A stretch of 63,234 bases of DNA, the filler included, from Octopus bimaculoides (Eukaryota), in the NCBI RefSeq assembly GCF_001194135.2. It is 6 parts of 5 records of this genome, joined end to end, with 100 filler letters (N's around TTAATTAATTAA, not from the genome) between each part and the next. Parts side by side here need not be neighbours in the genome. Positions count along the whole stretch, not along the records: positions 60,944 to 63,234 come from NC_068984.1; 5 more parts are not named here. One strand, written 5' to 3'. Numbering within the stretch: position 1 is the stretch's first letter; each line of letters begins with the position of its first letter. The notes under the pieces are model-generated. The model was not told the DNA's origin. It made no database searches and saw nothing but the letters and a program-made list of their open reading frames with translations. Positions 60,801 through 63,070 of the stretch are shown one piece after another. The translations under genes and the position numbers were made by a program.

Positions 60801-61124
60801 AATATACATATATACACACATGTATATATATATATATATATATNNNNNNNNNNNNNNNNNNNNNNNNNNNNNNNNNNNNNNNNNNNNTTAATTAATTAAN
60901 NNNNNNNNNNNNNNNNNNNNNNNNNNNNNNNNNNNNNNNNNNNATATATATATATATATATATATACATTGTCAAAGGATTATTAACATAACATGATCTA
61001 AATATGTACTCTATGAGGTTGATAAGACATATATTGTCCTGAAGTCCTCTACATAACAATATGTGTGGTCTTTGTTTGATGTGTGTGTGTGCTTGATGTG
61101 CGTGTGTTCATACATACGTACACA

Positions 61125-61597
61125 TACGTGTAGTAGAAAGTTTGCTTTTCCTCCACAACATTCCAAATTGAGTCCCAACGCGTGGCACCTTGTGCTAGTG
61201 TTTTTCTACTATAGCCGCGGGGGCCACCAAAGCCTTGTGAGTGGATTTGGTAGACGGAAACTGAATGAAGCTCATGATTACGTGAACACCTGAAGGAAAT
61301 AGTGAAACCACACGCACACACACGCATACACACACTTACATATATGTGCGAGTGCGTGTGTGTGTGTGCTTGCATGCGTGTGTGTCTTCCTGTCTGTTTT
61401 GTTATCCGCAACCGCTTGACAACCGGTGTTGGTGTGTTCATCTTCCCGTAACCTAGAGGTTCGGAAAAAAAGACTGATAGAATAAGTTCCAGGCTTTACA
61501 AAAAAAAAACATAAGTCCTGGGGATCGATTCGCTTGACTAAAATTCTTCAAGGTGGTGCTCCAGTATGGCCGTTGTCTAATTATTGAAACAAATAAA
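61125..61597 (+). mobile_element. SINE family A, diverged
   Basis: gcgtggcaccttgtgc..ccaaagccttgtgagtggatttggtagacggaaactg..accgcttgacaaccggtg..ggtgctccagtatggcc. Confidence 0.85.
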
Positions 61598-61803
61598 TAA
61601 TCCTTTCTACTAACGGCTTGAAATTTCGGGGAGGAGTTAAGTCGATTATATCGACCTCAGTACTTAACTGGTATTTAATTTATCGACCCCAAAAGAATGA
61701 AAGGTAAACTCGACCTCGGCGGAGCTTGAACTTAGAACGTAAAGACAGACTTATTTACATTATTTACATTTGACGGATATTTGTCCTCATCTTGTTTGTT
61801 GTT

Positions 61804-61849
61804 AACACAACGTTTCGGCTGATATACCCTCCAGCCTTCGTCAGGTGTC
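61804..61849 (-). ncRNA. Minimal (dimer-type) type I hammerhead ribozyme
   Basis: GACAC-CUGACGA-A-GGCUG-gagggUAUAU-CAGCC-GAAA-C-GU-U-GUGUU. Stem I is 5 bp, stem II 5 bp, and stem III is a loopless palindromic ACGU. Predicted cut at 61809/61808. Confidence 0.65.
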
Positions 61850-61939
61850 TTGGGGAAATTTCGAACCTGGATTCTCATTCCTAACGATGTTACTATTATT
61901 ATATTATTATTATTATTATTATTACTATTATTAATCATG

Positions 61940-62010
61940 TCGCTGCCGTGAATCGAACTCGGAACTTTGGGGTTAGTAGCCCGCGCTCTTAACCACTACG
62001 CCATATGCCC
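61940..62010 (-). promoter_or_regulatory. tRNA-derived Pol III internal promoter (A and B boxes)
   Basis: A box TGGCGTAGTGG (62003-61993) and B box GAGTTCGATTC (61960-61950). Confidence 0.75.
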
Positions 62011-62197
62011 GTACGGGTATATCAGCCGAAACGTTGTGTTAACAACAAATAAGATGAGGACAAATATCCGTCAAATGTAAATAATGTAAATAATGTTAAT
62101 AATTCCTCATCTCTTAAATATAGAACTGTAGTAAAGACAGACGAAATATCACTAAGCATTTCGCCCGGCATGCTAACGATTCTGCCAGATATATATC

Positions 62198-62252
62198 ATG
62201 GCACTCCGTCGGTTACGACGACGAGGGTTCGATTTGATCAGATCAACAGAAC
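62198..62252 (-). mobile_element. SINE family C 3' tail fragment
   Basis: tggcactccgtcggttacgacgacgagggttc matches the 59372 end. Confidence 0.8.
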
Positions 62253-62790
62253 ATTTTTATGTGCTAAGTGTACGGAACATTTCAGCTAACTAAGTATTGT
62301 TTATGGATAAATTTGGTATAGACCTTATACACGTTCATATGTCTTTCACTTTCTCTTCTCTTTCACTTTAAAACAAAAGTAAATAAATAAAGAATTTACG
62401 GAAATTAACGGATAAAACCAGCTGATACGGATGACAGTTCTGAGAGTCAAAGCGAAAAATTGCCCCAAGGGAATACCATTACAAATATTTTTCGAGTGCT
62501 TTCAACGTATCTCAGTTCCAAAGATTTGGCTGCTATTTTTAGCACACCCTGCTACCAGGTAATAGCTACTTGCGATAAAGGACCCGAAATACCTGTTAAG
62601 TGGTAGCAGGGCGTGCAAGAAATAGTAGCCTTTCTCCTTTTCTTGGGGAAGGAGCCGTTTACGCGTGATTTCGATGTCACATTCGTTGAAAGCACAGGAA
62701 ATAACCTGGAAAAAAACCTCCATGAAACAAAACTCTGTTTCTGGGAAACTCAAACTTTCCAGGTGACCCAACGGGTCACGGGTAGTTTAG

Positions 62791-62826
<36 letters not shown>

Positions 62827-62828
<2 letters not shown>

Positions 62829-63070
62829 GTATTTTTTATAAGCTTAAAGCTTATAGCGATGACTAAGGAAAATAGTCTAATAATAGGGCATATAAGCCCT
62901 CGAGAGAAAAAAGTAGGCTTTCCTGTACGCGACTAAGTGTGTTACCGATTACACCAGCGAACCAGCCTGCTCCTTTCTCTCAACAGGTTTATATGCCTCA
63001 TTATTAGACTATTTTCCTTTGTCATTTGCACGGTGATCGATATAAGCTTTAAGCTTATAAAAAAATACCA
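62827..63070. mobile_element. MITE-like element with ~80-95-bp imperfect terminal inverted repeats
   Basis: tggtattttttataagcttaaagcttata..gactaaggaaaatagtctaataat pairs with attattagactattttcctttgtc..tataagctttaagcttataaaaaaatacca. Confidence 0.75.

What the first reader, a model, noticed from the sequence alone, without database searches (positions are those of the whole stretch)
61751..62010. tRNA-promoter SINE whose 3' half is a Penelope-type tail carrying a hammerhead ribozyme
Seen: on the minus strand, a tRNA-like head with intact A and B boxes, a (TAA)n spacer, then a tail containing GACAC-CUGACGA-A-[GGCUG/CAGCC]-GAAAC-GUU-GUGUU. Established: PLE pseudo-LTRs carry minimal type I hammerheads whose palindromic stem III works as a dimer, an extra A after A9 is tolerated in some natural hammerheads, and SINE tails usually come from the partner element that mobilises them. 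Inference: this is a non-autonomous, Pol III-driven, self-cleaving retroelement that parasitises PLE machinery rather than LINE machinery. I do not recall a described SINE class of this architecture, but I cannot check.
Basis: partly seen in the sequence, partly recalled or inferred. Interest (0 to 1): 0.9.

Follow-up and report, generated by a model that had tools for sequence, protein, structure and literature searches.

The report
tRNA-headed retroelement with Penelope-type hammerhead tail
A 380-base insertion holds a short tRNA-like mobile element whose tail carries a minimal hammerhead ribozyme motif, and the shape of the insertion suggests it was copied in by a Penelope-like retrotransposon rather than a LINE; whether head and tail form a real family could not be tested from this one copy.

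Summary
On the minus strand there is a tRNA-like head (62010-61936) with an exact A box and a 9/11 B box. A TAA-rich spacer and a 40-nt body follow, then a minimal type I hammerhead (61849-61804) and a 3' end at 61751. The hammerhead descriptor hits once in the piece and never in 20,000 shuffles. It shows the published hallmarks of metazoan Penelope-like element (PLE) hammerheads.

- A 79-nt, 99% identical inverted copy of the tail (62015-62093) abuts the head's 5' end.
- A 37-bp extension (62094-62130) lies at one end only.
- A perfect 12-bp target-site duplication brackets the 380-bp block.

Published descriptions of PLE insertions report this architecture and say it is not seen with LINEs. 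So a PLE-type 3' module inserted by PLE-type machinery is well supported.

Two points remain open. No second copy could be retrieved, so a one-off chimera is not excluded. Self-cleavage is also untested.

The architecture is not unprecedented. Schistosome Sm-alpha and Sj-alpha are tRNA-derived SINE-like elements with hammerheads, and animal retrozymes are proposed PLE dependents. I found no paper describing a tRNA-headed SINE with a PLE minimal-hammerhead tail. Verdict: partly supported, moderately interesting.

The parts
61739..61750 (.). Left copy of the 12-bp target-site duplication, GTAAAGACAGAC
   Evidence: Perfect direct repeat D9. It ends exactly where the inverted repeat starts. The chance of this configuration is about 5e-6.
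61751..61803 (-). 3' terminal tail of the element (AACAACAAACAAG...(AATGTAAAT)2AA). Together with GUGUU it forms the 58-nt predicted 3' cleavage product.
   Evidence: The same terminus ...GTAAATAATGTAAATAA ends both the direct and the inverted copy.
61804..61849 (-). Minimal type I hammerhead motif: GACAC-CUGACGA-A-GGCUG-(10 nt loop)-CAGCC-GAAA-CG-U-U|GUGUU, with predicted cleavage between 61809 and 61808
   Evidence: One descriptor hit in the piece and 0 in 20,000 shuffles. Helices I and II appear in the local minimum-free-energy fold. It matches the published PLE minimal-hammerhead hallmarks. No Rfam hit.
61850..61889 (-). 40-nt body between spacer and hammerhead, containing a second B-box-like GGTTCGAAA (61867-61859)
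   Evidence: No significant similarity to the head (p=0.56).
61890..61935 (-). Imperfect (TAA)n spacer. It could be an internal microsatellite, or the tail of a separate head-only SINE.
61936..62010 (-). tRNA-like head with an internal Pol III promoter: A box 62003-61993, B box 61960-61950
   Evidence: boxes 45 nt apart. Rfam tRNA 13.6 bits. It is the only ARAGORN call in the piece at relaxed thresholds.
62011..62014 (.). GTAC junction between the inverted copy and the head. It may be the first 4 nt of the transcript.
   Evidence: The flanking 8-mers GGGCATAT and GGGTATAT match at 7 of 8 positions.
62015..62093 (+). Inverted, 5'-truncated second copy of the tail, starting in hammerhead loop II and ending at the same 3' terminus
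   Evidence: Inverted repeat I1: 79 nt, 99% complementary to 61751-61829. The single mismatch is at 61794/62050.
62094..62130 (.). 37-bp extension of unknown origin, present at this end of the insertion only
   Evidence: It lies between the end of the inverted repeat and the right TSD copy. It has no significant match elsewhere in the piece (p=0.34). It fits the 30-40 bp PLE 'tail extension'.
62131..62142 (.). Right copy of the 12-bp target-site duplication, GTAAAGACAGAC
61560..61738 (-). Context: the downstream part of an older SINE-like repeat that the insertion appears to have split. Its upstream part lies at about 62143-62200.
   Evidence: Read directly. Continuity across the reconstructed empty site is an inference. 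ARAGORN gives only a very weak call across the junction at a 70% threshold.

Best explanation
The 380 bp from 61751 to 62130 are one retrotransposition insertion into an older SINE-like repeat, bracketed by a 12-bp target-site duplication.

Contents, on the minus strand:
- A full-length non-autonomous element of about 260-264 nt.
- It has a tRNA-like head with Pol III A and B boxes, a TAA-rich spacer and a 40-nt body.
- It ends in a 3' module made of a PLE-type minimal hammerhead plus 58 nt.
- An inverted, 5'-truncated second copy of the last 79 nt abuts its 5' end, and a 37-bp extension follows that copy.

Inferred mechanism:
- Pol III transcribes a source copy from the head through the tail. 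There is no T4 terminator inside the element.
- A GIY-YIG Penelope-like element's reverse transcriptase and endonuclease recognise the borrowed PLE 3' module in trans.
- They integrate the RNA by target-primed reverse transcription from both sides of a 12-bp staggered break. This leaves the inverted copy and the extension.

The hammerhead is most likely an inherited part of the PLE 3' module. It has no helix III, so it could cleave only when two RNAs pair through ACGU. Cleavage would cut the 58-nt 3' end off the head, so it did not happen before this copy was reverse-transcribed.

Shown here: the anatomy, the statistics and the match to published PLE hallmarks. Inferred: Pol III transcription, the PLE partner, dimer cleavage, and that head and tail form one family.
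For: - Motif: one hammerhead hit in the piece against 0 in 20,000 shuffles.
- The published non-descriptor hallmarks of metazoan PLE minimal hammerheads that a single copy can show are present: a nucleotide between 9 and 10.1, G10.1-C11.1 and a palindromic 15.2/16.2. The fourth, consensus families with covariation in the same genome, cannot be tested here. Helix I is 5 bp, as in the families described there.
- Independent loci carrying the same core (CUGANGA-A-GGCUG..CAGCC-GAAAC-GUH) have unrelated but complementary helix I strands: UUUCC/GGAAA, UCCC/GGGA and GCCG/CGGC.
- Two of these same-core families lie next to PLE ORFs. L019 has an ORF with RVT_1 and GIY-YIG domains. The L093 ORF is homologous to it at 4e-50.
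- In the L093/L039/L091 family the hammerhead lies about 100 nt after the ORF and the element ends about 84 nt after the cleavage site. That is the same layout as this tail, which has a 40-nt body, the hammerhead and 58 nt.
- Insertion anatomy: a 79-nt, 99% inverted copy abutting the head's 5' end, a 37-bp one-sided extension and a perfect 12-bp TSD (TSD chance about 5e-6).
- Craig et al. 2021 describe exactly these features for PLE insertions and state that they are not observed in TPRT of non-LTR elements.
- Head: A and B boxes at tRNA spacing, and the only relaxed-threshold ARAGORN call in the piece.
- The truncation point of the inverted copy (GGGUAUAU) matches the head's 5' end (GGGCAUAU) at 7 of 8 positions. 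This suggests the head was already present when the junction formed.
- There is no T4 run inside the 264 nt. The first downstream one is at 61694.
Against: - Only one copy exists in the data. No other copy could be retrieved by any route.
- The TAA-rich spacer after the 75-nt head looks like an ordinary SINE tail. The body has its own B-box-like GGTTCGAAA. The head could therefore be a separate element.
- None of 40 eukaryote-like minimal-hammerhead loci from metagenomes has an A/B-box pair upstream, and ARAGORN finds no tRNA in a partly overlapping set of 43 loci.
- The head scores far below Rfam's tRNA gathering score (13.6 against 29 bits).
- No Rfam hammerhead model hits.
- In the full-length fold helix I is outcompeted, and overall stability is no better than shuffles (z=0.21).
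- There is no partial tandem (pLTR) copy and no autonomous partner is in hand.
- The 3' end, (AATGTAAAT)2AA, would also fit a CR1/L2-like LINE tail.
Confidence: 0.5

Rival explanations
1. One-off chimera or nesting. The hammerhead-bearing part (about 61889-61751) is a 5'-truncated PLE 3' end or a small PLE-dependent element. The tRNA-like head plus (TAA)n is a different SINE. The two were joined either by template switching during the same PLE-mediated event or by a later insertion at the junction. No head-plus-hammerhead family exists.
For: - The 75-nt head is followed directly by a TAA microsatellite, which is a typical SINE 3' tail.
- The body has its own B-box-like motif.
- Other minimal-hammerhead loci show no tRNA-like heads.
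- Most dispersed minimal hammerheads are thought to be truncated PLEs.
- PLEs can retrotranspose other RNAs in trans.
Against: - The inverted copy abuts the head's 5' end with only GTAC between them, as expected if the unit begins at the head.
- The 7-of-8 match between the head's 5' end and the truncation point argues that the head was present when the junction formed. This speaks against later nesting, but not against a same-event template switch.
- No separate TSD flanks the head-plus-spacer.
Confidence: 0.3
2. An ordinary LINE-dependent SINE. The tail comes from a CR1/L2/RTE-type LINE, the hammerhead-like motif has no PLE connection, and the inverted copy arose by twin priming or by two adjacent insertions.
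For: - The 3' end is a short tandem repeat, (AATGTAAAT)2AA, as in CR1/L2-type tails.
- A 12-bp TSD is also typical of LINE target-primed reverse transcription.
- Some LINEs carry ribozymes.
Against: - The motif is far beyond chance and carries the PLE-specific hallmarks.
- Twin priming inverts upstream sequence. It does not duplicate the 3' terminus.
- The inverted 5'-truncated copy and the 30-40 bp one-sided extension are stated not to occur in TPRT of non-LTR elements.
- A single TSD pair encloses both copies.
Confidence: 0.07
3. A DNA-level structure. Either this is a foldback or MITE-type DNA transposon with 79-bp terminal inverted repeats that captured a tRNA-like fragment, or it is an assembly artefact of a palindromic region.
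For: - There are long, nearly perfect inverted repeats.
- Another MITE-like foldback lies 700 bp away, at 62826-63070.
- PLE-type inverted structures are known to cause assembly problems.
Against: - The duplicated 12-mer touches the inverted repeat on one side only. On the other side it is 37 bp away.
- A 12-bp TSD is unusual for cut-and-paste transposons.
- One arm is simply the 3' part of a longer asymmetric unit, and both arms share a retroelement-like defined 3' terminus.
Confidence: 0.06

Closest known systems
Minimal type I hammerheads in the pseudo-LTRs of metazoan Penelope-like elements (Cervera & de la Pena 2014; Lunse, Weinberg & Breaker 2017)
   Same: - CUGANGA and GAAA boxes, an unpaired nucleotide between A9 and G10.1, and a G10.1-C11.1 pair.
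- A 5-bp helix I and no helix III, with a palindromic ACGU that can form helix III only in a dimer.
- A position 60-90 nt from the element's 3' end, as in the PLE family L093/L039/L091.
   Different: - It sits here behind a tRNA-like Pol III head, not behind an RT/GIY-YIG ORF.
- There is no direct pseudo-LTR partner copy.
- Cleavage activity and conservation across copies are untested.
Sm-alpha / Sj-alpha SINE-like retroposons of Schistosoma (Ferbeyre et al. 1998; Laha et al. 2000)
   Same: A tRNA-derived, Pol III-type non-autonomous element of a few hundred nt that carries a type I hammerhead.
   Different: - Sm-alpha carries a canonical hammerhead with loop-loop contacts and is found with the Rfam hammerhead motif. 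This one is the minimal PLE type and gets no Rfam hit.
- Sm-alpha is often in tandem arrays, and its promoter ends up 3' of the cleavage site. This copy is solitary and its promoter is 5' of the cleavage site.
- No PLE-type insertion anatomy has been reported for Sm-alpha in the papers I read.
Metazoan non-LTR retrozymes (Cervera & de la Pena 2020; Li, Clavereau & Pollet 2026 preprint)
   Same: Short non-coding hammerhead-bearing retroelements proposed to be mobilised by PLE machinery and related to PLE pseudo-LTRs.
   Different: - Retrozymes are tandem 170-400-nt repeats with one hammerhead per unit. They are processed to circular RNAs, and no tRNA head or Pol III promoter is described for them.
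- Here there is a single dispersed copy with a tRNA-like head and one hammerhead.
PLE insertion architecture (Evgen'ev & Arkhipova 2005; Craig et al. 2021)
   Same: An inverted 5'-truncated copy immediately adjacent to the 5' end, a 30-40 bp extension at one end only, and a TSD of variable length.
   Different: - The inserted unit is about 260 nt and non-coding.
- There is no partial tandem copy.
- The target is not a microsatellite.

Membership tests
Hammerhead ribozyme, metazoan PLE minimal type (min-HHR) | Conserved core boxes: CUGANGA, GAAA, U16.1, and H17 other than G | tested here: met
   CUGACGA at 61844-61838, GAAA at 61816-61813, U at 61810 and U at 61809.
Hammerhead ribozyme, metazoan PLE minimal type (min-HHR) | Unpaired nucleotide between A9 and 10.1, and a G10.1-C11.1 pair closing helix II | tested here: met
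   A at 61837. GGCUG(G)/(U)CAGCC gives 5 Watson-Crick pairs plus 1 G-U. These are the hallmarks listed.
Hammerhead ribozyme, metazoan PLE minimal type (min-HHR) | Short helix I (4-5 bp) and no helix III, with palindromic 15.2/16.2 | tested here: met
   GACAC/GUGUU gives 5 bp. A15.1-C-G-U16.1 is the palindrome ACGU.
Hammerhead ribozyme, metazoan PLE minimal type (min-HHR) | Consensus families with compensatory changes within the same genome | not testable with these tools
   No other copy from the source genome is available. Across unrelated metagenome loci with the same core, helix I covaries, but those loci were selected by a pattern that fixed the core and helix II.
Hammerhead ribozyme, metazoan PLE minimal type (min-HHR) | Self-cleavage, as a dimer | not testable with these tools
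   Needs an in vitro assay. Published minimal hammerheads cleave weakly.
Rfam hammerhead families (Hammerhead_1, _3, _II, HH9, HH10) | Match to a curated covariance model | tested here: not met
   No hit at E<=10, even in a 71-nt search. As a control, a PLE-linked minimal hammerhead (L093) and four other same-core hammerheads (L030, L078, L005, L027) are also missed at E<=1; the copy on the sixth locus searched, L021, lies about 20 nt from the contig end and is cut off.
tRNA-derived SINE (SINE2) | Internal Pol III promoter: A and B boxes at tRNA-like spacing | tested here: met
   TGGCGTAGTGG matches 11 of 11 and GAGTTCGATTC matches 9 of 11, 45 nt apart.
tRNA-derived SINE (SINE2) | Head recognisably derived from a tRNA | tested here: inconclusive
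   Rfam tRNA scores 13.6 bits against a gathering score of 29. ARAGORN finds nothing at default. At 90% and 80% thresholds the head is the only call in the piece.
tRNA-derived SINE (SINE2) | Many dispersed copies sharing head, body and tail | not testable with these tools
   The source genome is not in any searchable collection. All attempts returned nothing.
tRNA-derived SINE (SINE2) | 3' tail shared with an autonomous partner | not testable with these tools
   No partner from the same genome is in hand. There is only a layout analogy to PLE 3' ends from metagenomes.
PLE-mediated insertion | Inverted 5'-truncated copy immediately adjacent to the 5' end of the unit | tested here: met
   62015-62093 is 99% complementary to 61751-61829 and lies 4 nt from the head.
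PLE-mediated insertion | [quoted passage not shown] | tested here: met
   37 bp at 62094-62130, between the inverted copy and the right TSD. There is none at the other end.
PLE-mediated insertion | Target-site duplication of variable length | tested here: met
   A perfect 12-bp duplication with a chance of about 5e-6.
PLE-mediated insertion | Partial tandem copy forming a pseudo-LTR | tested here: not met
   There is no direct repeat of the element in the piece.
Metazoan non-LTR retrozyme | Tandem repeats of 170-400 nt, each with a hammerhead | tested here: not met
   There is one complete hammerhead, and the only second copy is inverted and truncated.
Sm-alpha/Sj-alpha SINE-like family | Canonical type I hammerhead with a helix III hairpin and loop-loop contacts | tested here: not met
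   There is no helix III and no Rfam Hammerhead_1 match.

The most novel reading that the evidence does not exclude
This copy belongs to a real family of Pol III-transcribed, tRNA-headed SINEs that have acquired the 3' module of a GIY-YIG Penelope-like element (minimal hammerhead plus about 60 nt). They would then be mobilised by PLE rather than LINE machinery, leaving PLE-style inverted copies and extensions. That would be a SINE class with a non-LINE partner. It would also help explain why thousands of minimal hammerheads lie dispersed outside full PLEs in invertebrate genomes.
Probability: 0.4. Interest if true: 0.65.

Novelty: new variant of a known kind. Interest (0 to 1): 0.5.

Why it matters
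- SINEs are defined by their dependence on LINE partners. A tRNA-headed SINE that uses the 3' module and integration machinery of a Penelope-like element would add a second kind of partner.
- It would give PLE biology a small, abundant reporter of what the PLE reverse transcriptase and endonuclease recognise.
- It would bear on an open question: whether the minimal hammerhead is needed for PLE mobility or merely rides along.
- If the window comes from an octopus, as I suspect from memory only, it may explain some unclassified SINEs. A recent O. vulgaris annotation lists 893 recently active unclassified SINE families next to 30 active Penelope families.
- If it is a one-off chimera, it is still a clean example of PLE trans-mobilisation with the complete insertion signature in 380 bp.

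Tried and rejected
- Rfam at E<=10 on the piece, on a 401-nt region and on 71 nt gave no hammerhead hit. The control shows that Rfam also misses a PLE-linked minimal hammerhead and four other same-core hammerheads, so I did not count this against the motif.
- ARAGORN at default settings finds no tRNA.
- Exact look-up of two window ORFs to recover the source contig found nothing on record.
- Translated ORFs used as bait found no homologues. One bait came from the tail and one from the abundant flanking repeat; the aim was to reach other copies or more of the source genome.
- Exact DNA scans with the tail or head found nothing. They covered viral contigs, bacterial and archaeal genomes, and DNA strings in the paper library.
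- The metagenome scan with the hammerhead pattern gave more than 120 loci. None has this tail (GUUGUGUUAAC), so none is the same family.
- The idea that the body is a second, truncated copy of the head is rejected. There is no similarity beyond chance (p=0.56).
- The origin of the 37-bp extension could not be traced within the piece (p=0.34).
- Whole-element RNA folding is no more stable than shuffles (z=0.21). A local hairpin, GUUGU-GUUA-ACAAC, competes for the helix I 3' strand.
- tRNA-likeness of the reconstructed empty site rests only on a 70%-threshold ARAGORN call amid many false positives, so I did not use it.
- A MITE or foldback reading is rejected, because the 12-mer touches only one arm of the inverted repeat.
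- Hairpin self-priming of the cDNA is rejected, because it would duplicate the head and not the tail.
Full report
**1. What is there**

All features described below are read on the minus strand.

- A 75-nt tRNA-like head runs from 62010 to 61936.
- A TAA-rich imperfect microsatellite spans 61935-61890.
- A 40-nt body spans 61889-61850.
- The hammerhead motif is GACAC-CUGACGA-A-GGCUG-(GAGGGUAUAU)-CAGCC-GAAA-CG-U-U|GUGUU at 61849-61804.
- A 53-nt A-rich end finishes with (AATGTAAAT)2AA at 61751.

**2. The head**

- The A box TGGCGTAGTGG fits TRGCNNAGTGG completely.
- The B box GAGTTCGATTC fits GGTTCGANNCC at 9 of 11 positions.
- The two boxes are 45 nt apart.
- As a tRNA the head is degenerate. 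ARAGORN at default settings finds nothing. Rfam's tRNA model gives 13.6 bits against a gathering score of 29.
- With ARAGORN thresholds lowered to 90% or 80%, this is the only call in the whole 2.3-kb piece (61937-62003, anticodon ACT).
- That profile is what one expects of a SINE head rather than a tRNA gene.
- The 264-nt unit contains no run of four T, so Pol III would not terminate inside it. The first T4 downstream is at 61694.

**3. The hammerhead: chance**

I wrote a descriptor for the minimal hammerhead. It requires:

- the core boxes;
- 0 or 1 unpaired nucleotide after A9;
- a helix II of at least 4 bp closed by G10.1-C11.1;
- a complementary 15.2/16.2 pair, U16.1, and H17 other than G;
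- a helix I of at least 4 bp.

It finds this site and nothing else in the piece. It finds nothing in 20,000 dinucleotide-preserving shuffles scanned on both strands. In isolation the 54-nt region folds with helix I and helix II as proposed.

**4. The hammerhead: class**

Cervera & de la Pena (2014) list features of metazoan PLE minimal hammerheads that were not part of their search descriptor:

- a conserved G10.1-C11.1 pair;
- palindromic 15.2-16.2, with no helix III, so that helix III forms only in a dimer.

They also describe a short helix I of 4-5 bp in the families they found. All of these are present here.

Rfam's hammerhead models do not match, even in a 71-nt search. They also miss a PLE-linked minimal hammerhead and four other same-core hammerheads used as controls. 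That negative is therefore uninformative for this subclass.

**5. Relatives from elsewhere**

- An exact-pattern scan of metagenome contigs with CTGANGA-N-GGCTG-N(4-16)-CAGCC-GAAACG returned more than 120 loci, where only a few chance matches would be expected by my rough estimate.
- They fall into two groups. One is GC-rich, with a real helix III. The other is AT-rich and eukaryote-like, with minimal hammerheads.
- Several of the latter share the A bulge and the zero-loop helix III with this site, but have unrelated and still complementary helix I strands. Examples are L030 (UUUCC/GGAAA), L078 (UCCC/GGGA) and L093 (GCCG/CGGC).
- Helix I was not part of the search pattern, so this is independent support that the shared core is a hammerhead.
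- L019 carries an ORF with RVT_1 and GIY-YIG domains on the hammerhead's strand. The L093 ORF is its homologue (4e-50).
- In the L093/L039/L091 family the hammerhead lies about 100 nt after the ORF, and the three copies stay collinear for about 84 nt beyond the cleavage site before ending in (TA)n.
- A PLE 3' end is thus a short spacer, a minimal hammerhead and 60-90 nt. The tail here has the same layout: 40 nt, the hammerhead and 58 nt.
- None of these loci has this element's tail (GUUGUGUUAAC), so none is the same family. None of the 40 AT-rich ones has an A/B-box pair within 450 nt upstream.

**6.

- The last 79 nt of the element (61751-61829) recur as an inverted repeat at 62015-62093, with one mismatch at 61794/62050.
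- The inverted copy begins inside hammerhead loop II and ends at the same terminus, ...GTAAATAATGTAAATAA. Only GTAC separates it from the head's 5' end.
- Beyond it lie 37 bp with no match elsewhere in the piece (62094-62130).
- Next comes GTAAAGACAGAC (62131-62142), a perfect copy of the 12 bases that precede the element at 61739-61750.
- The chance of such a 12-mer in this configuration is about 5e-6.
- The whole 380 bp therefore entered in one event, or at least within one pair of target-site duplications.
- Read directly, the flanks look like one older SINE-like repeat split by the insertion. That continuity is an inference.
- The single mismatch and the intact TSD indicate a young insertion.

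**7. Why this points to a PLE**

Craig et al. (2021) describe PLE insertions as follows. [quoted passage not shown] All three features are present here, in miniature. LINE twin priming would invert upstream sequence, not duplicate the 3' terminus. This evidence is independent of the hammerhead and agrees with it.

**8. Mechanism (inferred)**

- Pol III starts at or a few nucleotides before the head and reads through the tail.
- A PLE reverse transcriptase and endonuclease acting in trans uses the borrowed 3' module.
- Both 3'-OH ends of a 12-bp staggered break prime cDNA on tail-bearing RNAs. Both implied nicks are at AC^G.
- One cDNA runs to the 5' end of the RNA. The other stops in loop II.
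- The stop point, GGGUAUAU, matches the RNA's 5' end, GGGCAUAU, at 7 of 8 positions. This suggests that the junction formed while the head was present.
- The hammerhead cannot act as a monomer, because it has no helix III.
- Cleavage would detach the 58-nt 3' end from the head. Since this copy keeps that end, its template was uncleaved.
- In a read-through transcript that included the inverted copy, the hammerhead's 3' half would be locked in a 79-bp duplex.
- I therefore regard the motif as an inherited part of the PLE recognition module, with any cleavage role unproven. Published minimal hammerheads cleave weakly, and their role in PLEs is itself open.

**9. The weak point**

Everything rests on one copy.

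- The head is followed by a TAA microsatellite, which is how many SINEs end. The body has its own B-box-like GGTTCGAAA (61867-61859).
- A same-event template switch from a PLE-type 3' fragment to a separate SINE RNA would give the same picture.
- The body is not a copy of the head (p=0.56).
- I tried to reach more of the source genome by exact ORF look-up, translated-ORF baits, DNA scans of three collections and string searches of the literature. All failed.
- My estimates: about 0.5 for a true head-plus-tail family, 0.3 for a chimera, and the rest for a LINE partner, a DNA-level foldback or an assembly artefact.

**10. Comparison with what is known**

Sm-alpha and Sj-alpha of schistosomes are tRNA-derived, Pol III-transcribed SINE-like elements with hammerheads.
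- Animal non-LTR retrozymes are proposed non-autonomous dependents of PLEs.
- This element differs from both. Its hammerhead is the minimal PLE type, not the canonical one. It is solitary, not tandem. It has a tRNA-like head, which retrozymes are not described as having. It also shows the PLE insertion signature.
- Searches of the paper library for SINEs mobilised by PLEs found nothing.
- I file it as a new variant of a known kind, conditional on the family being real.

**11. Source organism**

From memory only, the flanking repeats resemble octopus SINE-rich DNA. No tool confirmed this. If it is true, the context fits: a 2026 annotation of O. vulgaris reports 893 recently active unclassified SINE families and 30 recently active Penelope families.

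Noticed in passing
window 62826-63070: A near-perfect foldback of about 245 bp next to a (GT)n run. Arms 62832-62863 and 63033-63064 are 94% complementary, and arms 62859-62898 and 62986-63025 are 90%. It looks like a MITE or hairpin element.
   Followed up: no
window 62528-62630: A hairpin with 44-nt arms (80% complementary) and a 15-nt loop. It gives weak hits to miRNA precursor models, far below their gathering scores (mir-5444, 33.5 against 90 bits). It is probably another inverted-repeat element and not a miRNA.
   Followed up: no
window 61560-61738 and 62143-62200 (minus strand): The flanks of the insertion read as one older SINE-like repeat with its own A/B-box-like motifs, split at GTCTGTCTTTAC. 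More SINE-like sequence and (AC)n/(GT)n runs fill 61060-61600.
   Followed up: partly
window 61867-61859 (minus strand): A second B-box-like GGTTCGAAA lies inside the 40-nt body, between the TAA spacer and the hammerhead. It has no A box and no similarity to the head.
   Followed up: partly
window 61750|61751 and 62130|62131: Both nicks implied by the 12-bp duplication fall at AC^G (GACAGAC^GAAA on the plus strand, CTTTAC^GTTC on the minus strand). This may reflect an endonuclease preference.
   Followed up: no
loci L007, L011, L037, L044, L071, L100 (metagenome contigs): GC-rich contigs, of which L007 (59% G+C) is densely coding and so looks prokaryotic or phage, carry hammerheads with the same CUGANGA-N-GGCUG..CAGCC-GAAACG core; in most copies the 3' flank reads as a helix III hairpin. 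They occur in pairs 2.1-2.9 kb apart on one strand.
   Followed up: no
loci L093, L039, L091: Three copies of one GIY-YIG PLE family end about 84 nt after the hammerhead cleavage site, directly in (TA)n. This matches the microsatellite insertion bias reported for PLEs.
   Followed up: partly
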